This document shows positions 2,058 through 57,613 of a stretch of 64,000 nt of DNA, piece after piece. The stretch comes from Hemiscyllium ocellatum (lineage: Eukaryota): the NCBI RefSeq assembly GCF_020745735.1, contig NC_083424.1, forward strand, positions 18,400,999 to 18,464,998, read 5' to 3'. The notes under the pieces were generated by a model. The model did no database searches and was not told the DNA's origin. It was given only the letters and a program-made list of their open reading frames with translations. A program made the position numbers and the translations under genes. Position 1 is the stretch's first letter. Each line of letters starts with the position of its first letter.

Positions 2058-2531
2058 ATGATACTGCAGGTGAAGTTTATGACCGGTGACATTGTCACAC
2101 TTGAGATCAATCCTTCCATTCACGTGTCAGCTCTCAAGATGATGATATATGAGAAGACCAAGGTACCTGTTTACCAACAGCGTCTGGTGATACAAAACGG
2201 GAACACTCAAGAGCTGAAGGACAACAAGAGACTGTCTGACTACTGTGTCCCTCCCAGTAACACTGTCATGCTGATCGTCAAGAATGAGGAGCGCATGCAG
2301 ATCTTCCTGCAGAATGACAAGGGAAAACTTTCTACATACGATGTTCGTCCCTCTCAGTCTGTTGAGGAATTTAAAGCACAAGTCCAGCGACAGGAGCGTG
2401 TCCCAGCCAATCAGCAGCGCCTGATGTACGATGGGAAACAGCTGGAGGATGGTCGGTTACTCTCTGACTACAATATTCAGCCAGAGAGCACCATCTTCCT
2501 CTTGCTGCGTTTGCGGGGTGGCTCACTGTGA
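2058..2531 (+). CDS. ISG15: ISG15-like di-ubiquitin modifier, copy 1 (157 aa)
   Basis: Two tandem ubiquitin-like domains. The second is exactly 76 aa (M80-G155: MQIFL...[37 protein letters not shown]), followed by a 2-aa SL extension. ISREs upstream; AATAAA at 2815 and 3685. Confidence 0.88.
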
Positions 2532-7196: not shown

Positions 7197-7500
7197 GGCA
7201 CGGTGGCTTATTGGTTAGCACTGCTGCCTCACAGCGCCCGGGGCATAGGTTCAATTCCCACCTCGGGCAACTGTGTGTGTGGAGTTTGCACATTCTCCCC
7301 ATCTCTGCGTGTGTTTCCTCTGGGTGCTCCGGTTTCCTCCCGCAGTCTAAAGATGTGCAGGTCAGGTGAATTGGCCATGCTAAATTGTCCATAGTGTTAG
7401 GTGTAGGGGAATGGGTCTGGGTGGGTTGCTCTTCAGAGGGTCAGTGTGGACTTATTGGTCTGAAGGGCCTGTTTCCATACTGGAGGGAATCTAATCTAAC
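7197..7500 (+). mobile_element. Shark tRNA-derived SINE, full length, inserted in CR1
   Basis: ggcacggtggct..tggttagcactgctgcctcacagcgcc head, box B, central domain and (aatct) tail. The CR1 reading resumes after it. Confidence 0.88.
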
Positions 7501-8344
7501 AAGCAAGTTAGACCAAGGGGAACCAATGGATGTCACCTACCTGGACTTCAACAAGGCCTTTGATAAGGTGCCATACACGAGGCTGCTGAGTAAGGTAAGA
7601 GCCCATGGTGTTAGAGGGAAAGTCCTGGCATGGTTAGAAGCTTGGCTGTCTGGCAGAAAATGGAGAGTGGGGATAAATGAGTCCTTCTCAGGATGGCAGC
7701 CAGTGACAAGTGGTGTTCCGCAGGACTCAATGTTGGGATCACAACTTTTCACTTTATACATTAACAATCTAGATGAAGGAACTGAGGGCATTCTGGTTAA
7801 GTTTTCAGACGGTACAAAGATAGGTAGAGGGACAATTAGCTTTGAAGAGGCAGGGAGGCTGCAGTAGGAGTTGGACAGGTTAGGAGAATGGGCAAAGAAG
7901 TGGCAGATGGAGTACAATGTGGAAAGTGTGAGGTCATGCACTTTGGTAGGAAGAATAGAGGCATAGACTAGTTTCTAAATCGGGAGAAAATTCAGAAGTC
8001 CGAAGTGCAAAGAGACTTGAGAGTTCTAGCCCAGGATTCTCTCAAGATAAACTTGCAGGTTAAGTCAGTATTTAGGAAGGCAAACACAGTGATGGCATTC
8101 ATTTTGAGAGGACTTGAATATAAAAGCAGGGTTGTACTTCTGAGGTTCTATGAGGCTCTGATCAGACCACATTTGGAGTATCGTACCCAGCTTTGGGCCC
8201 CATATCTCAGGAAGGGTGTACTGGGGTGTGTTGGAGTGTGTTCAGAGTAAGTTCACGAGAATGGTCCCAGGAATGAAAAGCTTTCATATATGAGCCACCA
8301 TGCCACCCTGTCGTATGGGCTTACCACGTCATCTTATGGTCTTA

Positions 8345-14877: not shown

Positions 14878-15351
14878 ATGATACTGCAGGTGAAGTTTAT
14901 GACCGGTGACATTGTCACACTTGAGATCAATCCTTCCATTCAAGTGTCAGCTCTCAAGATGATGATATATGAGAAGACCAAGGTACCTGTTTACCAACAG
15001 CGTCTGGTGATACAAAACGGGAACACTCAAGAGCTGAAGGACAACAAGAGACTGTCTGACTACTGTGTCCCTCCCAGTAACACTGTCATGCTGATCGTCA
15101 AGAATGAGGAGCGCATTCAGATCTTCCTGCAGAATGACAAGGGAAAACTTTCTACATACGATGTTCGTCCCTCTCAGTCTGTTGAGGAATTTAAAGCACA
15201 AGTCCAGCGACAGGAGCGTGTCCCAGCCAATCAGCAGCGCCTGATGTACGATGGGAAACAGCTGGAGGATGGTCGGTTACTCTCTGACTACAATATTCAG
15301 CCAGAGAGCACCATCTTCCTCTTGCTGCGTTTGCGGGGTGGCTCACTGTGA
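14878..15351 (+). CDS. ISG15: ISG15-like di-ubiquitin modifier, copy 2 (157 aa)
   Basis: Same as copy 1 except H22Q and M80I. Ends LRLRGG-SL; AATAAA at 15627 and 16064. Confidence 0.88.
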
Positions 15352-18913: not shown

Positions 18914-19156
18914 AGATTAGATTAGATTAGATTAGATTAGATTACTTACAGTGTGGAAACAGGCCCTTCGGCCCAACAAGTCCACACCGACCCGCCGAAG
19001 CGCAACCCACCCATACCCCTACATATACCCCTTACCTAACACTACGGGCAATTTAGCATGGCCAATTCACCTGACCCGCACATCTTTGGACTGTGGGAGG
19101 AAACCGGAGCACCCGGAGGAAACCCACGCAGACACGGGGAGGACGTGCAAACTCCA
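18914..19156 (-). mobile_element. Young shark SINE with (agatt)n tail inserted in the L1 inter-ORF region
   Basis: Reverse complement of the SINE core, CpG-rich, with a long (agatt)n tail at 18914-18945. Confidence 0.88.
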
Positions 19157-27541: not shown

Positions 27542-27711
27542 ACATCTAGAACCTAATCGGAAAATGCAACTTGTTTCTCCTGATGTCAATAAAGGCCTCA
27601 CTCAACTTTTCACTCAATTCTTCCACATCTCTTTTCATGAACCAAAGGGTCAGCATGGACTTGATGGGCTGAATAGCCTGTTTCCACACTGTAGAGATTC
27701 TATGATTCTAA

Positions 27712-30700
27712 AATGTCCAGTGAAGTTATATGGGTGGAACTGAAAAATAGGACAGAGATGATAATCTTATTGGGATTGTACTATAGATTCCCCAATAGTC
27801 AGTGGGAAATTGAGAAGCAAATATGTAAGAATAACTCAAATATGTGTAGGAATAATGGGGGTTGTAATGTTGAGTATTTTAACTTTCTAAACAAAGATTG
27901 GGACTGCCACGATGATAAAGGTTTGGATGGAGAAAAATTTGCTAAATGTATACAAAAAAATAGTGGATGTGCCTATTAGAGAAGGAACAAAACATGACCT
28001 CTTGGGAAATAAGGCAGGGCAAGTGACTGAGGTGTTAGTGGGGGAACACTTTGAGGCAAGTATTTATAATTCAATTCGTTTTAAAATAGAAAGGGAAAGG
28101 ATAGATCTGATCTAAAAGTTAAAGCTCCAAATGGAAATAAGGCCAATTTTGATGGTATTAGGTAAGAACTTTCAAAGGTTGTTTGGGGGAGGCTGTTCAC
28201 AGGTAAAGGGATGGTTGGAAAGTGGGAGGCATTCAAAAGTAAGATCACAAGAGTTCAGAGCCAGTATGCTCCTGGTAGTGCAAAGGGCAAGGCTGGTAGG
28301 TGGAGGGAATGCTAGACGATGAGAAAAATTGAAACTGTGGTCACGAAAAAGGAGGACGCGCATGTCAGGTATAGACAGCTGGGATTGAGTGAATCCAAAG
28401 TGGAGTAAAAGGGTAGCAAGAAGAATACTTAAGAAGGAAATCAGGAGAGCAAAAAGGGGACATGAGATAGCTTTGCCAAATAGGGGTACAGAGAATCCAA
28501 AGAGATTCTACAAATATATTAAGGTCAAAGGAATAACTAGGGAGAGAATGGGGCCTCTTTAAGATCAATGAGGCTACCTATGCATGAAACTGCAGGATAT
28601 GGGTGAGATACGAAAAGAGTATTTTGCATCAGTATTTACTGTGTGGGAGAATATGGAAGCTAGGGAGCTCTAGGAAATAAATAGTGGCATCTTGAAAAGT
28701 GTCCATACTATAGAGCATAGAATGTTGCAGTGCAGTACAGGCCCTTCTGCCCTCAATGTTGCACTGATCTGTGAAATTAATCTGATGCCCATCTAACCTA
28801 CACCATCCCATTATTATCCATTTGTATGTCCAATGCCCATTTAAATGCCCTGAATATTGGCGAGTCTACTACTGTCGCAGGCAGGTCGTTCATGCCCCTT
28901 CTACTCTCTGAATGAAGAAACTACCCCTAATATTTGTCCGAAATCTATCACCCCTCAATTTAAACTATGTCCCTACGTGTTAGCCTTCACCATTTAAGGA
29001 AAAATGCTCTCACTGTCCACCCTATCTAACCCTCTGACTATGTTGTACACCTCAACTGAGTCACCTCTCAACCTTCTCTCCAGCGAAAACAGCCTCAGTT
29101 CCCTCAGCCTTTCCTTGTAAGATCTTCCTTCCATACCAGGCAACATCCTAGTATATTGCCTCTGAACCCTTTCCAAAGTTTCCACATCTTTCCTATAATG
29201 TGGTGACCAGAACTGTACGCAATACTCTCGGTGCGGCCTTAACGGTGCCTTGTACAGCTGAAGCGTGACCTTGTGGTTCCGAAACTCAATCCCCCTACCA
29301 ATAAACACCAACACACCATATGCCTTCTGAACAACTCTATCAACCTGGGTGGCAACTTTCAGGATTATGCACCAGAAGAGGAGCTGCTGGAGGTCTTAGA
29401 ATGCATAAAGCCCTGGGACCAGATCAGGTGCCAAGCAGTAGACATTGTCTATATGGACTTCAACAAAGTGTTTGACAAGGTTCTGCATGGTCGACTGGAT
29501 AGCAAGATTACTTCATATGGACTCTAGGGGGAGCTAGCCAATCAAGTACAAAACTGGTTTGAAGGTAGGAGACAGAGGGTGGTGGGAGAGGTTTGTTTTT
29601 TGGACTGGAGACCTGTGACCAGTGGTGTGATGCAAGGATCTGTGCTGGATCAACTGCTTTTTGTCATTATATAAATGACTTGGGTTGAATGGAGGAGACA
29701 TGGTTAGTAAGTTTGCAGAAGACATCAACATCGGTGGCATTGTAGACAGTGAAAAATGATATCTCAGAGTACATCAGAACCTTGAAAAGATGGTCGAATG
29801 GATTGAGGATTGATAGATGGAGTTTAATTTAGATAAATGAGAGGTGTTACATTTGGTAAGGCAAACCAGGCCAGGATTTATTCAGTTAATGGTACAGCCA
29901 TGGCGAACATTGCTGAACAAAGAGATGTAGGGGTGCAGGTGCCTTGTTCCTTGCAAGTGGAGTTGCAGGTAGACAGGGTAGCAAAGAAGGTATTTGGCAC
30001 GGTTGCCATCATTGGTGAATGCATTGAGTACAGGAATTGGGACATCATGCTGCAATAGTAAGGGACATTGGTAAGGTCACTTTCAGATTGCTGCATCCAA
30101 TTCTGGTTGCCCTTCTATAGGAAAGATGTCATTAAACTTGAAAGGTTTCAGAAAAACTTTTCAAGGATGTTGCTAGGATTCAAGGGTTGAGCTTGAACCT
30201 CATCTAGAGAGAGGCTGCATAGGGTGGGGCTGTTTTTCCCTGGAGCATCGGAAGCTATGGGATTATCTTGTAGAGGTTTATATAATCATGGCGGGCAAGA
30301 ATAGGGTGAAGAGAAAAGGTCTTTTCCCTAGGGTGGGAGAGTCCAGAACAAGAAGACATACATTTATAGTGAGAGGGGAATGATTTTAAATGGACCTGAA
30401 AGGCAGCATTTTCATGCAGAGGATAGTGCATGTATAGAATGAGCTGCCAGGAGAGGTGCCAGAGACTGACACATTCACAACATTCGAAAGACATCTAGAT
30501 TGGTACATGAATATGAAGTGTTTAGAAGGATATGGACCAAATGCTGGCAAATGAGGCTAGAATAGGTTAGGATATCTGGTCGGCGCATATAAGTTGGACA
30601 AAGGGTCTGTTCTGAAAATGTGTTGCTGGAAAAGCGCAGCAGGTCAGGCAGCATCCAAGGAACAGGAGATTTGACGTTTCGGGCATAAGCCCTTCTTCAG

Positions 30701-31165: not shown

Positions 31166-32819
31166 AACTTTCCTAGTAGTCCTTTAATGGCCACTTGGAT
31201 GATATAGGAGAATACTGCTGCACCAGTGAACCTTAACTCACCATCTCCTCACTGGCGAGAGTAAGCCTGGAGGTGAAATTAAAAGTATTGAACATACAAG
31301 AGTGAAAGACAAGGTAGACATGCAAGTGAATACACAGTGGAGATACGTCACTGTACTTGTTTCACAATTTGTTGCAGGAGCAGGGCTGGGAGCAGGTGTG
31401 ATCTTCACTATTGAGGTGCTGCTCAGGTGACAATCTGTTTATCGGTTCAGAAAGGAAGCCCCAGGGGCTGTCCAGAGAGTGCAGCAAGAAAACAATCCAA
31501 GCCCTACAATAACATCCGTAATCTTTTCAAACCTCTGGCCGTGAATTCAATGCCCTTGTTGAATCCCTTTGTCCTTGGTAAGTACAGTAAACATATCACA
31601 AATTGGGAAGTGTAAACACATCATTTGTCTACTTCTCAAACAGTCAGGATACTCAGCATTCTATAATATATAGAGATGTAGTCAGAACAGAAATCTCTAC
31701 ACCTACTTTGACAAAGAAAAGGATTTTTGAAAAGGTGGCTAAAAGCAAGTTGAAATCAGTAGCAGACTATTCTTTCTGATAAATATATCATACACAGGGG
31801 ATTCTAGCAGAAGTGAATCTTTAAACTTGATTTCATTGGATTAACGTGACAGCAGAGTATATTGGGATAACCAATCAGATTGTGTCAGGTATCAGATATT
31901 CTGATGTAACAAGGAAGGAGAGGAGAGGACTGCTGGAGATGTAGTGAGATAAAGAAGGGTAAACTTACTGTCAGAGAGAGGATTATTCGATGAGCAGAAA
32001 ATCAGAAACAAGGGAGTTGTACCAGAGGTAGTTTTACTCATTTATTAATCCAAATCTGAGACACTCTGTGAAAAGCAAAACAAAATACAAACTGCTCAAT
32101 GAGGTGATTCTGCAACGATTCTGCTGATCCACAGTTTCCTGGATTTGTGGTACTGGCAAAGACTGTGAGTTCGTTCTGTACTTTTGTATTAAACAAGTTG
32201 TTCTGAATTTCAGTAACAATTCACACAGGAGGAGGAGGAGGAGGCCATTCTCTCTGTGTCAGCTCTCTTTGATAGCAGCCAAACTAGCCCCTTGTTTTTG
32301 TAGATTTGCACATTTTTTTCACAACAGTTTTCAGAAAATCTTTTAATTCCCTTTTGAAACCCGTGACTGAATCTGCGTCAGCAACACTCAGGTGATGCAT
32401 TCCAAATGCTAAATGCTAAATGTAGATAAGTGTTTGCATATGTTGCGACTGATCCTTTTCAATGACTTTAAATTAGTATCCTCCATTTTATATTCGAGCA
32501 ATAGGAACAGCTTTTCCCTATTTATACTGTCCAGTTTGCTCACAATGTTGAAGACCTCTAGCAAATCACCTCTCACCCTTCTCTTCTATAAGCTTCAATC
32601 CTTTCTCCTAAGTGAACATTCTGATATCTTTAACCATCCTGTAAATCTCTTCTGCGCCATCTTTTAATGGTTCCACATTCTTCCTAAGTGCTGTGCCCAG
32701 AATTAAACATACCACTCAGTCAAGGCCAATCGTGTGTCGAATAAAGATTTACAATAACTTCTCAGGTTTGGGATTCTGTGCTTGGATTTATAAAGCCAAG
32801 GATCTCAGAAGCCTCATTG

Positions 32820-33160
32820 GGGTGGCACGGTGGCTTTGGGGCAGCATGGTGGCTCTGGGATGGCACGGTGTCTCAGTGGTTAGCACTGCTACCTCACAGT
32901 ACCAGGGGCCCGGGTTCGATTCCAGCCTTAGGTGACTGTCTGTGTGGAGTTTGCACATTCTCCCCATGTCTATGTGGATTTACTGTGGTTTCCTCTCACA
33001 GTCCAAAAGATGTGCAGGTCAGGTGAATTGGCCATGCTGAATTGCCCATAGTGTTAGGTGCATTAGTCAGAGGGAAGTGGGTCTGGATGGCTTACCCTTC
33101 GGTGGGTCGGTGTAGACTTGTTGGGCCGAAGGGCCTGTTTCCACACTGTAGGGAATCTAC
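32820..33160 (+). mobile_element. Shark SINE with a reiterated 5' head, within an old minus-strand CR1
   Basis: Three gg(t/c)(g/a)gca(c/t)ggtg(g)ct starts, then the standard SINE body and tail. Confidence 0.85.
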
Positions 33161-33459
33161 TTTCTCAATGTTTAAACATTTGAGTACATATACCTCTGCC
33201 CCTTTATTTTGTATCCTTTTTCAAAAGCTGTCTCTTCTCATTTTTCCCACCAAAATGAATCATTTCTGTGTTAAATTTCACTTGCTGCATAACCAACATT
33301 CCAGCAGCCTGTCTATGTTCTGTTGAAGTCTATCACTATTCTCCTCACAGTTCATCATTCTTCCAAATTTTGAGTGATTTACAAATTTTGAAATTATGCC
33401 CTGTAACCCAGATCCAGGTCACGAATGTAGACCAAGACAAGCAATGATTCTAATGTTCT

Positions 33460-33600
33460 GAGTTCTGAGGAAGGGCCACTGGATCCAAAACGTTAACTCT
33501 GATTTCTCTCCACAGATGCTGCCAGAGCTGTTGAGCTTATCCAGCAGATTCTGTTTTTGTTTCTGGTTTCCAGCATCCACAGTTCTTTTGGTTTTTATTT
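33460..33600 (+). mobile_element. Short non-autonomous Penelope-derived repeat with a degenerate hammerhead
   Basis: gttCTGAGGAagggccactggatccAAAACGTTaac followed by cagatgctgccagag...ccagcatccacag, as in Penelope pseudo-LTRs. Confidence 0.55.
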
Positions 33601-35605
33601 ACCATGATATACCATCCTTCAGTCTGAAAAGCAGGCATTCATTATTACTGCCTGACTCCTGTCAGTCAGCCAGCTTATACCACAGTGCCAATGAAACACC
33701 AAATATTATTTCTGGATGTTTTTTGTTTTTTTTCCAATTATCTAAACTTTTCTGAAATATGTTGGTCATGCCAGTATAGATGTTAATTTTGTAAATTAAT
33801 GCAGTCATCTCCACCTTGCCTGTCTACTCAAGGACTCTGTTTTCAGTCTCCTGTTCCCTTACAATTTTTGTTCCAATTTCTTCCTTCCTCCTTTGCTGAC
33901 CCCTCTGCCATTTTCAGCGTATATCTCCAAAGCTCAGTGTCTTTGCTAACCAGTTGTAGATCAGACTGTGCTGTGAATGACAGAACAACCCTGGATCCAG
34001 CTGAACATTCATTCTTTCCAGCAAAGGTCTGCAGGATGAACCTTGCGCAATCTTACACATTACAAACAAGGCGATGTTGAATCTGAGTGTTGCCCATCTA
34101 TCGCTGACATGAAAACAGTAACTTCATCAATAATGTTCATGATTGCTTAAAAATCACCCTGAAGCAGAGAGCTCAAACAGAATCACATCTCATTTGGCAC
34201 TGGTTTGAAAAGCTTTTGTTATTAATTTAAAACTCAGTCAAGGAAGAGATATGGAAAGCATAGAGCAGGTGAGATACAAAAATAGAGAGGGGCCTAAACT
34301 GTCCCGTATCCCTGGAGAATTATCCATGAGATTGCATCTATCTATCTGTCCGACTCCAATGATAAGCAGGAACAAGGGAGTAGGCCTCAGAGAGATTCTG
34401 CAGATTGCCCTGAACCAATAACATAAACTATTCCTTCCATGGCTACAAATAAGGATGAAACAAAATAAACATAAGGTGAGCTACAAGGCAGTCAGTCATG
34501 CTAGGAATCCGCCAAGGGGCTAACTATCAACTACATCCCTAAGGAGAGCTACATGAAGATCTTGATGATATTACTGAAAGAAAAGCCAGTTGGTTGAGAT
34601 AATGTGAATGATGTTCCTGTGAATCATGTACGAGGTTGTGTTGGTGGTGTTTAGGATGGGTGTCTAGTGAGCATGAAAACAGAATATACTGTTTGAAGGT
34701 CTCATTGAGCAGAGAATTAACTGGTGTTTATGTGGTTGAGAACTGAGAACAGGTTTTTAATCAGATTTTTGTGCGTTAAGTGGAATTACCGATCTGAAAA
34801 TTTGGTGGAGGCTCATTACACTGTGCATCTTTCTTTTCTCTTCCTACTTGATTTGTTAAGGGTGTTAGAGAATTTGATTTTGTGTTATCACTTGGGTTTG
34901 CTGGCGCCTCAATTTTTCTATTGGTGGATTTTCTGCCAGTAGCTTCCAAAGTGCTGTATTGGATTTTCCATGAGTGTGCCCTGCAGCCGTGCTTTTTGGA
35001 GGAAGGAGACAGGACCAATGAAGGAAGGTCAGACAGATCCTACTGAGTGTACCTACAGCACATACAAATGGGCTAAAGATGGATGTTATGTCCTGGTAGA
35101 TCTATTAATGTAAGACTGACTGAAGTATTCAGAGAGATCTATGAATTAAAAGCAACATAACTTCAAATGGTGGAAATCAGAGACTACAAAGCAGCTGGCA
35201 GCATATCACATGTCAGGATAACTGGAATCGATTGGAATTGTTAAAAATTATGAAAGGGTAAATATTGAAAGATTATTTTAATTTATCAGCTGATGGTAAC
35301 AACCAGAGGATAAGTTCTTCTCAGAAGAGGAAAGGAGGAAGATAGAAATATTTTTATTTGAAGTACAGATGTAATTGAAGCCAAATTAATCATAGCACTT
35401 CAAAGCAAATTTGATCAACATTCGAAGAAGAAAAACATTAAAAGCTAAAGAAATGTTAAAATAATGGGCTGAGTGGTCTTTATTTTTTAATCTATAAAAA
35501 TAACTCTTGATTGAAAAGGTAACTGTCATTTTCTCTCCAGATTTAGGAGCCAAAGGCTATTGAGCACTTGGATACAAAGAAAATTGAAGCTAAGTTGAGT
35601 AGACT

Positions 35606-36124
35606 ATGGGCAACAGTGCAAGTGATAACTTTAGCGACTTTGAGGAATTTGACTTTGGCACCAGCGAAGACGATCTAATCAATGATGTTTCGGCAAGTTT
35701 TGGTGATTTAGACACAAATGAATACCTGGAACAATATGGAGCAATCATTTATTTATATATTGTTGGGGAGGCAAAGACATCCTTTTACAAAATTGGCCAC
35801 ACGATTTGCCCCCAGCGAAAACGAGCAAAACTTCAAGTTGGAAATCCTCGTAAACTTATTTACAAGAGTGTCCTGAAATTACAATTATTGAAGAAGAAAC
35901 GGGGAGACTTTTTCAAGCTGAAGGATTTGGCTGAGCATATTGAAGCTGAAATCACTAAGGAGCTGGTAGATTTCAGTTGTGAATATGAACAATGCAGTAA
36001 ATGGTTTGAGTTCAGTGCAGCAACCAAACCCATTTTGTATGACATTTTCAAAACAAAAGTTTACAATATTGTTAATCTGAACAAAGACTGGGTCACTGTA
36101 GAACCTGTTCCTAAGAAACGCTGA
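35606..36124 (+). CDS. Uncharacterised T5orf172/MUG113-type GIY-YIG domain protein with N-myristoylation-like and acidic N-terminus (172 aa)
   Basis: Motifs YLYIVG...YKIGHT..P......LQVGNP..L...AEHIEAEI...KWF. Unbroken ORF, strong Kozak (actATGG), in-frame TAG at 35600, clean acceptor cattttctctccAG ending at 35540. Confidence 0.75.
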   Translation: MGNSASDNFSDFEEFDFGTSEDDLINDVSASFGDLDTNEYLEQYGAIIYLYIVGEAKTSFYKIGHTICPQRKRAKLQVGNPRKLIYKSVLKLQLLKKKRGDFFKLKDLAEHIEAEITKELVDFSCEYEQCSKWFEFSAATKPILYDIFKTKVYNIVNLNKDWVTVEPVPKKR

Positions 36125-37749: not shown

Positions 37750-38060
37750 GGGGACGGCATGGTGGCTCAGTGGTTAGCACTGCTGCCTTACAGTCCATCC
37801 TCGGGCGACTGTCTGTGTGGAGTTTGCACATTTGCCCTATGTCTGTGTGGGTTTGTTCCGGTTTCCTCCCACAGTCCAAAGATATGCAGGTCAGGTCAAT
37901 TGGCCATGCTAAATTGCCCATAGAGATGTGTAGTTTAGGTGCATTAGTCAGGGCAAATATAGGATAGAGGAATATGTCTGGGAGAGTTACTCTTTGGAGG
38001 TTGGTGTGGACTTGTTGGGCCAAAGGGCCTGTTTCCACACTGTAGGGATTCTAATTCTAA
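37750..38060 (+). mobile_element. Shark SINE
   Basis: ggcatggtggctcagtggttagcactgctgcct head through gggcctgtttccacactgtagggattcta tail. Confidence 0.88.
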
Positions 38061-38679
38061 AAAAAAGTACCGAAACTGAATTCAATCTTTTCGTATAGAA
38101 CATTGGGCAAATGCACATAAAGCAAGTTTGAAGTCTATTACACTTAAGTGAATGGGAGCATGTTGACTTAGGAACTTAACAGATAGAAAAGGTGAAATGT
38201 CAACAGTGCATGGTCTCTCTGTTCATCTTTAGTGGGAGAGATGCTATCTATGATTATTTTAGCACCAACGGTCCAGTAAGCTGTTTGTTTTGGGAGTTAA
38301 ATCTAGGTTTGTTTTAAAAAGCTCAGTACAACCTGAGGGGTTACAAAATCAATTTCTTTCTTCAAGTCAAGGAAGGATCTTCAAATGAGGGATATTTGAC
38401 CTGAAGATTTATTTAAAGAAAACCCAAGGTAAGCTATATTGTTATTAGATGGGTTGATGATGATTAGGGAGGTTCTCTGCTTTCAATTCATCTGAATGCT
38501 TGCTGATAGACTTAGCTATAACTCAAACCTGGTGTGAGCAGTTTTCAGTTCATCGAAAGCAGTTAGCTAAAATAAATGATAGTTGGATCTGTACTGTAAG
38601 CTTCAGAAAAGCTAACTTGATTATTAGTTATGTGGAAAATGCATAGGACCTAATCTCAGTTTCAACTTCAAGGGGGATG

Positions 38680-55404: not shown

Positions 55405-57613
55405 ATAGAACATAGAACATAGAAAAATACAGCATAGTACAGGCCCTTCGGCCCTCGATGTTGCACCGACCAAAGCCTACCTAACCTACACTAGTCCAAT
55501 AACCTCCATATGCTTATCCAATGCCTGCTTAAATGACCATAAAAAGGGAGAGTCCACCATTGATACTGGCAGGGCATTCCATGAACTCACAACCCGCTGA
55601 GTAAAGAATCTACTCCTAACATCTGTCCTATACCAACCTCCCCTTAATTTAAAGCTGTGTCCCCTAGTAACAGCTGACTCCATACGCGGAAAAAGGTTCT
55701 CACTGTCAACCCTACCTAAATCCCTAATCATCTTGTACACCTCTATCAAATCTCCCCTAAACCTTCTTTTCTCCAATGAGAACAGCCCCAAGTGCCTCAG
55801 CCTTTCCTCATACGATCTTCCTACCATGCCAGGCAACATCCTGGTAAACCTCCTCTGCACCCGTTCCAGTGCCTCCACATCCTTCCTATAGTGTGGCGAC
55901 CAAAACTGCACACAATACTTCAGATAAGGCCGCACCAGAGTCTTATACAACTGCAACATGACCTCAGGACTCCGGAACTCGATTCCTCTACCAATAAAGC
56001 CCAGTACGCCATATGCCTTCTTCACAGCACTATTTACCTGGGTGGCAACTTTCAGAGATCTGTGTACATGGACACCAAGATCCCTCTGCTCATCCACAAT
56101 ACCATGTAGCCTACCATTAGCCCAGTAATCCATCTTCTTGTTACTCCTACCAAAGTGAATGACTTCACACTTCGCTACATTGAACTCCATTTGCCACCTT
56201 TCTGCGCAGCTCTGCAACTTATCTATATCCCGCTGTAACCTGCCACATCCTTCTTCGCTGTCCACAACTCCACCGACTTTCGTATCATCCGCAAACTTGC
56301 TCACCCAGCCTTCAAGCCCCTCCTCCAAGTCATTTATAAAGATGACAAACAGCAATGGTCCCAAAACAGATCCTTGTGGAACACCACTAGTAACTGCACT
56401 CCAAGATGAACCTTTACTATCAACTACTACCCTTTGTCTCCTTCCAGCCAGCCAATTCCTAATCCAAACCTCTAATGCACCCTCAATGCCATACCTCCAT
56501 AATGTTTGCAGTAGCCTACCATGGGGAACCTTATCAAACACCTTGCTAAAATCCATATACACCACATCTACTGCTTTACCCTTGTCCACTTCCTTGGTCA
56601 CCTTCTCAAAGAACTCAATAAGGTTTGTGAGGCACGACCTGCCCTTCACAAAACCATGCTGACTATCCTTGATCACATTACTCCTATCCAGATGTTCATA
56701 AATCCTATCCCTTACATTTCTCTCTAAGACTTTGCCCACAACAGAAGTGAGACTCACTGGCCTATAGTTACTAGGGCTGTCCCTACTCCCCTTCTTGAAC
56801 AAGGGGACCACACTCGCTATCCTCCAGTCTTCTGGCACTATTCCTGTAGACAACGACGACATAAAAATCAAGGCCAATGGCTCCACTATCTCCTCCCTAG
56901 CTTCCCAGAGGATCCTAGGATAAATGCCATCAGGCCTAGGGGACTTATCTATTTTCACCCTTTCCAGTATTCCCCGGACCTCTTCCCTACATACCTCAAA
57001 GCCATCCATTCTAATCACTTGTGACTCAATATTCACATCAGCAACAATGTCCTGTTCCTGAGTGAATACTGATGAAAAGTATTGATTTAGTGTCTCTCCA
57101 ATCTCCTCCACCTCCACACACAACTTCCCACTACTATCCTTGACTGGACCGATACCTACCCTAGTCATCCTTTTATTCCTGACATACCTATAGAAAGCCT
57201 TTGGGTTTTCCCTAATCCTACCAACCAAGGACTTTTCATGTCCCCTTCTCACTGCTCTTAGCTCTCTCTTTAGATCCTTCCTGGCTACCTTATAACTCTC
57301 AATCGCCCCAACTGAACCTTCACGCCTCATCTTTACATAGGCCGCCCTCTTCCCTTTTACAAGGGATTCCAATTCCTTATTAAACCACGGCTCCCTCACA
57401 AGACCCTTTCCTCCCTGCCTGACTGGTACATACTTATCAAGGACACCCAATAGCTGCTCCTTGAACAAGCTCCACATATCATTTGTGTCCTTCGCTTGAA
57501 GCCTATTTTTCCAATTCACACATCCTAAGTCATGCCTCACCGCATCATAATTTCCCTGCCCCCAGCTATAACTCCTGTCCTGCAGTGCACACTTATCCCC
57601 CTCCATCACTAGA
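55405..57613 (-). mobile_element. Young 5'-truncated CR1 LINE with an uninterrupted 707-codon RT ORF (55486-57609)
   Basis: NYRPVSLTS, SQHGF, YMDFSKVFDKVPH, GVPQGSVLGP, KFADDTK without stops; (catagaa)n tail; gctac on both sides (55400 and 57614) as a possible TSD. Confidence 0.93.

What the first reader, a model, noticed from the sequence alone, without database searches (positions are those of the whole stretch)
35541..36124. Intact vertebrate gene for a phage/virus-type T5orf172 (MUG113) GIY-YIG protein
Seen: an unbroken 172-codon ORF amid decayed repeats, with a clean splice acceptor at 35540, a strong Kozak ATG and an in-frame stop 6 nt upstream, so it looks like a spliced host gene with the whole CDS in one exon. 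Motifs Y49-L-Y51, Y61-K-I-G-H-T, P69, L76-Q-V-G-N-P81, A109..I-E113 and W133-F134 follow the T5orf172/MUG113 pattern (YVY...YKIG.T..P..RL..LQTGNP...A..LE..LH...EWF). Known: this GIY-YIG branch is typical of phages, bacteria, large DNA viruses and fungi; the familiar vertebrate GIY-YIG proteins (SLX1, ANKLE1, Penelope EN) are different branches, and this ORF lacks the Cys/His pattern of the Penelope ENs in this same window. Inference: a horizontally acquired, or ancient and patchily retained, nuclease-fold gene domesticated in cartilaginous fish.
Basis: partly seen in the sequence, partly recalled or inferred. Interest (0 to 1): 0.88.

Follow-up and report, generated by a model that had tools for sequence, protein, structure and literature searches.

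The report
Conserved shark gene, GIY-YIG (T5orf172) fold
A small, single-copy, spliced shark gene encodes a protein with the nuclease fold best known from phages and giant viruses; purifying selection keeps it intact, it belongs to a small uncharacterised fish gene family, and it has lost one key catalytic residue, so it may bind rather than cut.

Summary
An ATG ORF of 172 codons lies at 35606-36124 (+), with a stop 6 nt upstream, A at -3 and G at +4, and a pyrimidine-tract/AG acceptor at 35540. It is a real gene. The orthologue in Chiloscyllium punctatum is 98% identical (7 synonymous and 3 non-synonymous changes, dN/dS about 0.10). A 60%-identical orthologue in an unidentified species keeps exactly 172 codons without indels (dN/dS about 0.11). 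A Scyliorhinus torazame gene model places an exon junction at the homologue of 32164|35541, which is flanked in the window by GTGAGT and CAG. The direct Pfam match is just under threshold (T5orf172, 18.5 against 20 bits). Homology is nonetheless secure: phmmer gives E 1e-10 to 4e-9 to shark and fish paralogues that pass Pfam, hhalign gives 99%, and the AlphaFold model has 145 Foldseek matches to viral T5orf172/GIY-YIG/BRO-C proteins. The nearest relatives are not viral. They are small proteins from sharks and from a sturgeon DNA sample, which favours old, patchy inheritance over recent transfer. The orthogroup replaced the family's helix-1 arginine (K/Q). It also gained a conserved MG-x-x-x-S N-terminus, a 15-residue basic insertion and a C-terminal extension. 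I read it as a neofunctionalised, probably non-catalytic or weakly catalytic, GIY-YIG-fold protein. It is a new member of a known family and of moderate interest.

The parts
32061..32164 (+). Candidate non-coding first exon (5' UTR). The 5' end is unknown and may lie further upstream.
   Evidence: The N-terminal part of the S. torazame gene model P0002 matches the translation of 32061-32144 (tblastn E 0.03). Its residues 30-54 match the translation of 32141-32164 joined to 35541-35594 (score 62 against a background maximum of 35, and 0 of 2000 shuffles reach it). In the window these frames contain stops, so the exon is non-coding here.
32165..35540 (+). Intron in the 5' UTR (3376 nt), with a GTGAGT donor at 32165-32170 and a pyrimidine tract plus CAG acceptor at 35528-35540.
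   Evidence: The sequence is shown. The junction is homologous to that of the S. torazame model. An acceptor-like site also sits just 5' of the ATG in the 60% orthologue L004, the sturgeon-sample paralogue L003 and paralogue L008-L010. L011 has the 5' sequence of a spliced transcript, diverging exactly at that acceptor.
35541..35605 (+). 5' UTR part of exon 2, with the in-frame TAG at 35600-35602.
   Evidence: The stop closes the ORF's frame, so no upstream exon can add coding sequence in that frame.
35606..36124 (+). Complete CDS, 172 codons plus TGA.
   Evidence: The orthologue is 98% identical in C. punctatum (P0001/L001), 72% in S. torazame (P0002) and 60% in an unidentified species (P0003/P0013/P0014, L004/L012), always 172 codons where the whole gene is seen. 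dN/dS is 0.10 and 0.11.
35606..35740 (+). N-terminal region, residues 1-45. It is predicted disordered and acidic/aromatic, and begins M-G-N-x-x-S, which fits the N-myristoylation pattern.
   Evidence: pLDDT is below 50 for residues 1-12 and 19-34. The region is 58% identical to the 60% orthologue, about as conserved as the domain core at 63%. G2 and S6 are kept in all three species where the N-terminus is seen. That it is myristoylated is my inference from the motif and was not tested.
35741..36016 (+). T5orf172/MUG113-type GIY-YIG domain, residues 46-137.
   Evidence: Pfam T5orf172 matches residues 49-137 to profile positions 2-89 of 101, E 0.003. hhalign against the Pfam-positive relatives gives probability 99.0 and E 6e-18. 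The AF2 core is confident, with strands 47-55, 60-66 and 84-94 and helices 69-77 and 105-119.
35888..35932 (+). Orthogroup-specific 15-residue basic insertion, residues 95-109.
   Evidence: It is absent from all paralogues in alignments A2, A3 and the hhalign output. It is the best-conserved segment against the 60% orthologue, at 12 of 15 identical.
36017..36121 (+). C-terminal helix (141-158), strand (163-167) and a basic tail ending P-K-K-R.
   Evidence: One search gives the secondary structure. The segment is 69% identical to the 60% orthologue. The last seven residues are almost unchanged in all orthologues. The helix is shared with the sturgeon-sample type paralogues; the final strand and tail are specific to the orthogroup.

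Best explanation
This is a bona fide, single-copy, two-exon (at least) host gene of a bamboo-shark-like genome. A non-coding first exon ending at 32164 is spliced to 35541, and the second exon carries the whole 172-codon CDS. The product is a small one-domain protein with the T5orf172/MUG113 variety of the GIY-YIG nuclease fold. It belongs to a small family of uncharacterised fish proteins, so it most likely entered or was inherited by early jawed vertebrates and was then lost from most lineages; a recent transfer from a phage or virus is less likely. Within that family the 172-aa orthogroup has been remodelled. It keeps the two strand tyrosines, the glycine and the helix glutamate (Y51, Y61, G64, E113). 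It replaced the near-invariant helix-1 arginine (K72 here, Q in two other species) and the glutamate before W133. It also gained three conserved additions: an acidic N-terminal tail that starts with a myristoylation-type motif, a basic 15-residue insertion, and a C-terminal strand plus basic tail. My reading is that the fold now serves mainly as a binding module for nucleic acid or for a partner protein, with no or much reduced phosphodiester cleavage, possibly tethered to membranes by an N-terminal lipid. Shown: gene reality, selection, fold, family membership, the homologous exon junction, and the residue substitutions. Inferred: loss of catalysis, myristoylation, the binding role, and vertical inheritance.
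For: Gene reality: dN/dS is 0.10 against C. punctatum (7 synonymous and 3 non-synonymous changes; P = 8e-4 for that excess of synonymous changes) and about 0.11 against a 60%-identical orthologue, with no indel in 172 codons and a conserved start and stop. Copy number: one copy in the window, and one protein cluster and one contig per species in the 5.8- and 1.84-billion protein sets. Splicing: for this gene. For the paralogues, there is a spliced-transcript signature in L011 against L008-L010, and the Mustelus gene spans 8.2 kb for 156 aa. Fold and family: Pfam T5orf172 E 0.003 over 88 of 101 profile positions. phmmer gives E 1.2e-10, 4.1e-9 and 2.1e-6 to P0006, P0007 and P0008, which pass Pfam's thresholds for T5orf172 and MUG113. 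hhalign gives probability 99.0. The AF2 model has pLDDT 77.7 and pTM 0.74. Foldseek finds 145 BFVD matches at E <= 1e-3, led by GIY-YIG, T5orf172, BRO and MUG113 proteins, and Slx1 is the best PDB match (probability 0.94). No close viral donor: no phage, bacterial or giant-virus protein reached E <= 1e-3 in the exhaustive phmmer search. The NJ tree puts the orthogroup next to the sturgeon-sample type proteins. Remodelling: the arginine column is R in 22 of 26 other domains and K,K,Q,Q in the orthogroup. The glutamate before W133 is E in 20 of 26 others and K,K,N,N in the orthogroup. The catalytic half, residues 110-137, is the least conserved segment (39%), while the orthogroup-specific insertion (80%) and C-terminal part (69%) are the most conserved.
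Against: No RNA evidence for this gene itself was available; the exon-1 model rests on another species' annotated gene model plus canonical splice signals. That model (P0002) is partial and departs from the ORF's first 33 residues, so it is imperfect. Lys can sometimes stand in for Arg, and R71 and R73 flank K72 in the two Chiloscyllium species and S. torazame, so residual nuclease activity is not excluded. E113 and both tyrosines are strictly kept, which would be odd for a purely non-catalytic scaffold. The AF2 model used an alignment that included bona fide T5orf172 paralogues, so the fold result is not fully independent of the sequence result. The species of the 60% orthologue and of most small paralogues is unknown. 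The sturgeon assignment rests on total DNA from a Huso huso brain sample and on vertebrate-like CpG depletion in a 1.3-kb contig. The tree has no support values.
Confidence: 0.6

Rival explanations
1. It is an active GIY-YIG nuclease of the host, acting for example in DNA repair, recombination or defence against foreign DNA. Lys72 or a neighbouring Arg would take the role of the canonical arginine.
For: Y51, Y61, G64 and E113 are invariant in the orthogroup. K72 is positively charged, and R71 and R73 flank it in three of four orthologues. T5orf172 proteins of phage ICP1 are active nucleases that depend on the conserved glutamate (PMC10448857). Strong purifying selection applies. Slx1 is the best PDB structural match.
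Against: Two of four orthologues have Gln in the arginine column, and one of them also lacks both flanking arginines. From my knowledge of I-TevI and UvrC mutagenesis, not tested here, this arginine is needed for catalysis. The segment carrying the catalytic helix is the least conserved at 39%. There is no fused DNA-binding domain such as those that target phage T5orf172 enzymes. The N-terminal MG-x-x-x-S motif suggests a membrane location rather than a chromatin one.
Confidence: 0.3
2. It is cargo of a mobile or viral element (a Polinton-like element, an endogenous large-DNA-virus fragment or a transposon), or a recent horizontal acquisition from one, and not an old host gene.
For: T5orf172 domains are common in giant viruses, baculovirus and ascovirus BRO proteins, phages and polinton-like viruses (PMC11296320 listed). 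The window is rich in retroelement remains. The family is missing from most annotated vertebrates.
Against: There is a single copy in the window and a single cluster per species. No other viral-type ORF or second family copy lies nearby. The repeats that flank the locus are copies of a dispersed repeat at 74% identity, not element termini. The 5'-UTR intron is shared with paralogues. Orthologues at 98%, 72% and 60% identity are all under purifying selection. No viral protein was found at E <= 1e-3 by sequence, and the best structural matches are only 11-26% identical.
Confidence: 0.06
3. It is a chance ORF or a dying pseudogene.
For: The direct Pfam score is below the gathering threshold. No protein identical to the window's was found in the collection searched, where the best hit was the 98% C. 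punctatum protein.
Against: Homology is significant, the ORF length is conserved over saturated synonymous divergence, dN/dS is about 0.1, and the fold prediction is confident.
Confidence: 0.01

Closest known systems
Uncharacterised shark T5orf172/MUG113 proteins: LOC119956361 of Scyliorhinus canicula (P0004), XP_072348556 of S. torazame (P0006), LOC144486570, LOC144486571 and LOC144490070 of Mustelus asterias (P0011, P0019, P0015); also small unnamed proteins from a Huso huso DNA sample and other runs (P0008, P0016-P0018, P0007, P0009)
   Same: They share the domain, with the same conserved columns: Y51, Y61, G64, P69, Q77, G79, N80, R82, L84, E113 and W133. phmmer E-values run from 1e-10 to 1e-4. 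The sturgeon-sample type also shares the residues after R82 and the C-terminal helix. The gene layout is the same, with a 5'-UTR intron ending just before the ATG.
   Different: The relatives are 120-160 aa, or tandem arrays of 2-4 domains. They pass Pfam's thresholds, keep the helix-1 arginine (22 of 26 domains), and lack the MG-x-x-x-S start, the 15-residue insertion and the C-terminal strand and tail.
Pfam T5orf172 (PF10544) / MUG113 (PF13455) proteins of phages, giant viruses, baculoviruses and ascoviruses (the C-terminal domain of BRO proteins), including the T5orf172 homing endonucleases of vibriophage ICP1
   Same: The fold and motif order are the same. The glutamate shown to be needed for nuclease activity in one ICP1 enzyme (PMC10448857) corresponds by alignment to E113.
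   Different: The viral proteins are usually fused to DNA-binding domains (Bro-N, KilA-N and others) and are mobile or multi-copy. This protein has a single domain, is single-copy, is encoded by a spliced host gene, is 11-26% identical at best, and lacks the arginine.
Fungal cellular members: S. pombe Mug113 and S. cerevisiae YPL034W/Yfs1
   Same: They are cellular eukaryotic proteins of the same Pfam clan with no assigned function (PMC12719033).
   Different: No direct sequence hit to them appeared in my searches, so the relationship is known only at Pfam-family level. The fungal proteins are larger, with flanking regions, and genetic data point to DNA repair, which is not known for the shark gene.
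SLX1, the familiar vertebrate GIY-YIG structure-specific nuclease
   Same: It is the best solved-structure match for the model (6sei_A, E 0.03, probability 0.94, TM about 0.42). They share the GIY-YIG core.
   Different: There is no significant sequence similarity. This protein has no C-terminal zinc-finger domain (only three cysteines in 172 residues) and belongs to a different branch of the superfamily.

Membership tests
Pfam T5orf172 (PF10544) / MUG113 (PF13455), GIY-YIG clan | The protein itself scores at or above the curated gathering threshold | tested here: not met
   T5orf172 scores 18.5 bits against a cut-off of 20, E 0.003, covering profile positions 2-89 of 101. There is no MUG113 hit at E <= 10. 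The orthologues P0002 and P0003 give no hit at E <= 0.1.
Pfam T5orf172 (PF10544) / MUG113 (PF13455), GIY-YIG clan | Significant homology to proteins that do pass the thresholds (transitive membership) | tested here: met
   phmmer gives E 1.2e-10 (P0006), 4.1e-9 (P0007) and 2.1e-6 (P0008) in a library of 1.84 billion proteins. These score 25-81 bits on T5orf172 and MUG113. 12 of 15 members of alignment A3 hit T5orf172. hhalign of the orthogroup against the others gives probability 99.0 and E 6.4e-18.
GIY-YIG superfamily | The characteristic alpha/beta core: a three-stranded sheet with the two motif strands, followed by helices | tested here: met
   The AF2 model has strands 47-55, 60-66 and 84-94 and helices 69-77 and 105-119, with core pLDDT 85-95. 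145 BFVD matches at E <= 1e-3 are led by GIY-YIG, T5orf172, BRO and MUG113 proteins. Slx1 is the top PDB match. Caveat: the input alignment contained paralogues that are known family members.
GIY-YIG superfamily | Tyrosine in strand 1, and tyrosine plus glycine in strand 2 | tested here: met
   Y51, Y61 and G64 are invariant in the four orthologues. Among 26 other family domains they are Y in 22, Y in 22 and G in 26.
GIY-YIG superfamily | Conserved catalytic arginine in the first helix | tested here: not met
   The column is R in 22 of 26 other family domains and invariant in the 18 single-domain relatives of A6. It is K in the window and C. punctatum and Q in S. torazame and the 60% orthologue. 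The same column aligns with the arginine of the solved GIY-YIG protein 1ywl.
GIY-YIG superfamily | Conserved acidic (metal-binding) glutamate in the later helix | tested here: met
   E113 is invariant in the orthogroup and E in 21 of 26 other domains.
GIY-YIG superfamily | Nuclease activity | not testable with these tools
   No biochemical data exist for any vertebrate member, and none was found in the literature searches.
Homing-endonuclease or mobile-element gene (phage-type T5orf172) | Multi-copy or mobile, fused to a DNA-targeting domain, and sited within an element or intron | tested here: not met
   It is single-copy, has no second Pfam domain, occupies an orthologous position in C. punctatum within 20 kb of colinear flanks, and is under purifying selection.
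SLX1 / Penelope-type GIY-YIG endonucleases | A GIY-YIG core plus a Cys/His zinc-binding module, with sequence similarity to those branches | tested here: not met
   There is no sequence hit to them in the PDB or Pfam and only a fold-level match to Slx1. The protein has three cysteines and no Cys/His cluster.
N-myristoylated proteins | Gly2 after the initiator Met, a small uncharged residue at 3, Ser/Thr at 6, and no Pro at 7 | tested here: met
   The window protein begins M-G-N-S-A-S-D. The 60% orthologue keeps G2, N3, S6 and D7. This tests the sequence pattern only; whether the lipid is attached could not be tested.

The most novel reading that the evidence does not exclude
The 172-aa gene and the small sturgeon-sample type proteins are orthologues of one ancient jawed-vertebrate gene. 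In this reading a GIY-YIG nuclease domain has been converted into a lipid-anchored, non-cutting sensor or adaptor. It might work in an innate-immune setting, since it lies 20 kb downstream of a tandem pair of ISG15-like genes on the same strand. That would make it a vertebrate pseudo-nuclease lineage that was lost from teleosts and tetrapods and has never been described.
Probability: 0.15. Interest if true: 0.7.

Novelty: new member of a known kind. Interest (0 to 1): 0.45.

Why it matters
Vertebrates are usually credited with only a few GIY-YIG proteins (SLX1, ANKLE1 and the endonucleases of Penelope-like elements). This locus shows that the T5orf172/MUG113 branch, known from phages, giant and insect DNA viruses, bacteria and fungi, also exists in cartilaginous fishes, and probably in sturgeons, as conserved, spliced host genes. 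At present those genes are annotated only as hypothetical or uncharacterised proteins. The 172-aa orthogroup is a clean natural example of a nuclease fold kept under strong selection while a core catalytic residue changed and new conserved appendages appeared. It therefore bears on how mobile-element nuclease domains are repurposed. It does not open a long-standing question, and the function remains unknown.

Tried and rejected
1. PHROGs, NCBIfam and PADLOC scans of the ORF gave only weak or irrelevant hits or none. PDB sequence searches with the protein and with the family profile were not significant; the best was a GIY-YIG UPF0213 protein at E 0.4.
2. I tried to find exon 1 from window-versus-C. 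punctatum conservation. The species are too close (95% identity everywhere) for exons to stand out.
3. I searched for an interferon-response element because of the ISG15-like neighbours. One match was found against 0.54 expected, and it lies far from the gene, so I dropped the idea.
4. I looked up run accessions to name the source species. Only SRR12532268 was found, which is total DNA from Huso huso brain (PMC7602020). The species behind SRR089296, SRR17051962/3, SRR25169343, SRR33006160-8 and the ERZ assemblies stay unknown, and cluster look-ups gave no names.
5. DNA for the S. torazame, Mustelus and SRR089296 loci could not be fetched because the files were too large. As a result, dN/dS with S. 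torazame, the state of its first 33 codons, and synteny beyond Chiloscyllium were not tested.
6. Two high-ranking phmmer hits are spurious. P0005 is a Big_4 repeat protein that matches only the acidic residues 11-39, and P0010 is a low-complexity repeat.
7. CapR of the Vibrio PLE satellite looked like a precedent for a domesticated T5orf172 protein, but it derives from the N-terminal DNA-binding domain of those endonucleases, not from the T5orf172 domain.
8. Slip: I pasted the window's own 172-residue protein, copied, into a script. It was immediately overwritten by the value read from file.
9. The consensus lines printed by the alignment tools were not used.
Full report
**1. The observation.** The window holds an ATG-initiated ORF at 35606-36124 (+) encoding 172 residues.
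- Only three ORFs in the window are this long or longer.
- The ORF has no second copy in the window, by tblastn or by a family HMM on the six-frame translation.
- Around it lie copies of a dispersed repeat of about 300 bp (32857-33162 and 37751-38063, with further copies elsewhere) and reverse-transcriptase ORFs.

**2. It is a gene under selection.** The protein searches found four kinds of relative:
- a 98%-identical 172-aa protein of Chiloscyllium punctatum (chiPu_0015273);
- a 72%-identical partial model of Scyliorhinus torazame (scyTo_0019683);
- a 60%-identical 172-aa protein assembled from three sequencing runs of an unidentified species;
- weaker shark paralogues.

The C. punctatum locus (L001) is colinear with the window over about 20 kb, at 92.6-94.5% identity in the BLAST blocks and about 95% over the aligned positions. 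Inside the ORF there are only 10 differences in 519 nt. Seven are synonymous and three are not, giving dN/dS 0.10. The probability of seven or more synonymous changes among ten is 8e-4, and of so few differences given the flank divergence is 1e-3.

Against the 60% orthologue (L004), synonymous sites are saturated, dN is 0.26 and dN/dS is about 0.11. There is no indel in 172 codons. Start and stop are in the same places, and an in-frame stop lies upstream of the ATG there too. This rules out a chance ORF, a pseudogene or neutral decay.

**3. Gene structure.** The S. torazame model spans 8.9 kb and has an N-terminal part that is not in the ORF.
- Its first 27 residues match the translation of window 32061-32144.
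- Its residues 30-54 match the translation of 32141-32164 joined directly to 35541-35594. The score is 62, against a maximum of 35 for any same-length stretch in the six frames of the window, and none of 2000 shuffles reaches it.
- These frames contain stops in the window, so the exon is non-coding here. The torazame model appears to be a partial prediction that read through a 5' UTR.

My model is therefore exon 1 (from at least 32061 to 32164), an intron (32165-35540), and exon 2 (from 35541) carrying the full CDS.

The same layout recurs across the family. An acceptor-like site lies 51 nt before the ATG in L004, 9 nt before it in the sturgeon-sample contig L003, and 1 nt before it in L008-L010. 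Contig L011, from the same run series, is identical to L008-L010 from that point on but carries 78 unrelated bases upstream, which is the signature of a spliced transcript. The RefSeq gene of a Mustelus paralogue spans 8.2 kb for 156 residues. I found no direct transcript evidence for the window's own gene.

**4. What the protein is.**
- *Direct Pfam scan.* It gives only T5orf172, just below threshold (18.5 against 20 bits, E 0.003), but over almost the full profile.
- *Sequence homology.* An exhaustive phmmer search of 1.84 billion representatives found, beyond the orthologues, only a handful of proteins. Two are artefacts: a Big_4 repeat protein matching the acidic tail, and a low-complexity repeat. 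The rest are small proteins or tandem arrays that pass Pfam's thresholds for both T5orf172 and MUG113. A profile of the orthogroup aligns to a profile of 18 such relatives with probability 99.0% and E 6e-18.
- *Structure.* An AlphaFold2 model built on 15 family sequences is confident over residues 45-168 (mean pLDDT 77.7, pTM 0.74), and residues 1-34 are disordered. Foldseek gives 145 matches at E <= 1e-3 in the viral structure library. The list is led by proteins named GIY-YIG nuclease, T5 Orf172 domain, BRO and MUG113, from giant viruses, baculoviruses, ascoviruses, iridoviruses and phages. Among solved structures the best match is the GIY-YIG nuclease Slx1 (probability 0.94).

The fold assignment is thus supported by sequence and by structure. 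The caveat is that the structure prediction was informed by the paralogues.

**5. Where it comes from.** The relatives that can be named are all sharks (Scyliorhinus canicula, S. torazame, Mustelus asterias). One close paralogue (P0008) comes from total DNA of a beluga sturgeon brain (PMC7602020), on a CpG-depleted contig with a vertebrate-style acceptor before the ATG. More distant members sit on long contigs that look like non-vertebrate eukaryotes: gene calls are sparse, a TFIIH p62-like gene lies next door, and there is no CpG depletion.

A neighbour-joining tree of 30 domains, without support values, places the 172-aa orthogroup beside the sturgeon-sample type proteins. With them it also shares the residues following R82 and the C-terminal helix. 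It sits apart from a second shark clade of multi-domain proteins. No phage, bacterial or giant-virus protein came up by sequence at E <= 1e-3, and the structural matches are only 11-26% identical.

The simplest reading is an old family in jawed vertebrates, or earlier, that most lineages lost, rather than a recent capture from a virus. I hold this with moderate confidence because most source species are unknown. I found no paper describing vertebrate T5orf172/MUG113 genes. A sponge gene carries the annotation (PMC10176882), and the fungal members Mug113 and YPL034W have no assigned function (PMC12719033).

**6. How it probably works.** Column counts over 4 orthologues and 26 other family domains:

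| Column (window residue) | Orthogroup (4 sequences) | Other family domains (26) |
|---|---|---|
| Y51 | kept in all | Y in 22 |
| Y61 | kept in all | Y in 22 |
| G64 | kept in all | G in 26 |
| P69, Q77, G79, N80, P81, R82, L84, W133, F134 | kept in all | mostly conserved (19-26 of 26) |
| E113 | kept in all | E in 21 |
| Helix-1 arginine (K72) | K, K, Q, Q | R in 22; invariant in the 18 single-domain relatives |
| Glutamate before W133 (K132) | K, K, N, N | E in 20 |

The helix-1 arginine column aligns with the arginine of a solved GIY-YIG protein. From general knowledge of I-TevI and UvrC, not tested here, that arginine is needed for cleavage.

Conservation against the 60% orthologue is uneven. 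It is lowest in the segment that carries the catalytic helix (residues 110-137, 39%). It is highest in parts that only this orthogroup has: the 15-residue basic insertion (80%) and the C-terminal helix, strand and basic tail (69%). The disordered acidic N-terminus is about as conserved as the domain core (58% against 63%) and begins with a myristoylation-type pattern in every species where it is seen.

I therefore favour a remodelled GIY-YIG fold that works as a binding module, possibly lipid-anchored, with little or no nuclease activity (about 0.45 on its own). An active nuclease that uses Lys72 or a neighbouring Arg is the main rival (about 0.3). That the gene is real, conserved, spliced and of this fold I hold at about 0.9.

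**7. Verdict.** The gene is one member of a small fish family rather than an orphan. Its closest relatives are cellular, not viral. It has lost a hallmark catalytic residue. It is a new, divergent member of a known domain family in an unexpected host group. That makes it moderately interesting, with function unknown.

**Housekeeping.** The only joining of segments was the two predicted exons of this host gene, as they stand, to test the splice model. In one search I pasted the window's own protein into a script, which I should have read from file.

Noticed in passing
window 2058-2531 (+) and 14878-15351 (+): There are two 157-aa ORFs, 99% identical to each other. Each has two ubiquitin-like domains, ends in L-R-L-R-G-G plus two residues, and matches ISG15 structures over its full length (E about 1e-25). 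They look like a tandem pair of ISG15-like genes about 12.8 kb apart, on the same strand as the T5orf172 gene and 20 kb upstream of it.
   Followed up: partly
window 55486-57609 (-) and 7385-7867 (+): A 707-aa ORF carries a reverse-transcriptase domain (RVT_1, E 2e-34), and a shorter RT fragment lies at the second position. These are retroelement remains.
   Followed up: no
window 32857-33162, 37751-38063, 7197-7502, 18932-19156 (-), 1448-1679, 27647-27713: A dispersed repeat of about 300 bp occurs at 70-86% identity. Two copies in direct orientation bracket the T5orf172 exon at a distance of about 2.4 and 1.6 kb. They look like SINE-type copies, not element termini.
   Followed up: partly
P0004, P0006, P0012 (proteins from S. 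canicula, S. torazame and an unknown Logan run): Some family members are tandem arrays of 2, 3 and 4 T5orf172/MUG113 domains in one polypeptide. The repeats within a protein are very similar to one another, which indicates recent internal duplication.
   Followed up: partly
L011:1-82 compared with L008:2270-2354: Contig L011 is identical to L008-L010 from 4 nt before the ATG onward. Upstream it carries 78 unrelated bases, and the break falls exactly at a pyrimidine-tract/CAG acceptor. This suggests a spliced mRNA and unspliced or genomic copies of the same paralogue within one run series, SRR33006160-8.
   Followed up: yes
L002:1-19: The contig begins with a library-adapter-like sequence, so the initiator Met of P0007 is probably an artefact and that protein is truncated at its 5' end.
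   Followed up: no
L006:7857-9326 (-) and L005:4713-4970 (-): Distant family members P0025 and P0020 lie on contigs of 0.6-0.9 Mb from ENA metagenome assemblies. Their neighbours look eukaryotic (a TFIIH p62 PH/BSD protein and a PI3/PI4-kinase fragment), and CpG is not depleted. They probably come from non-vertebrate eukaryotes of unknown identity.
   Followed up: partly
P0002 residues 55-57 (S. torazame model) relative to window 35595-35704: The torazame gene model jumps from the 5'-UTR-like stretch straight to the equivalent of residue 34 of the ORF and skips the conserved N-terminus. This is either a mis-predicted short intron or a real difference in that species. It could not be resolved because the DNA could not be fetched.
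   Followed up: partly
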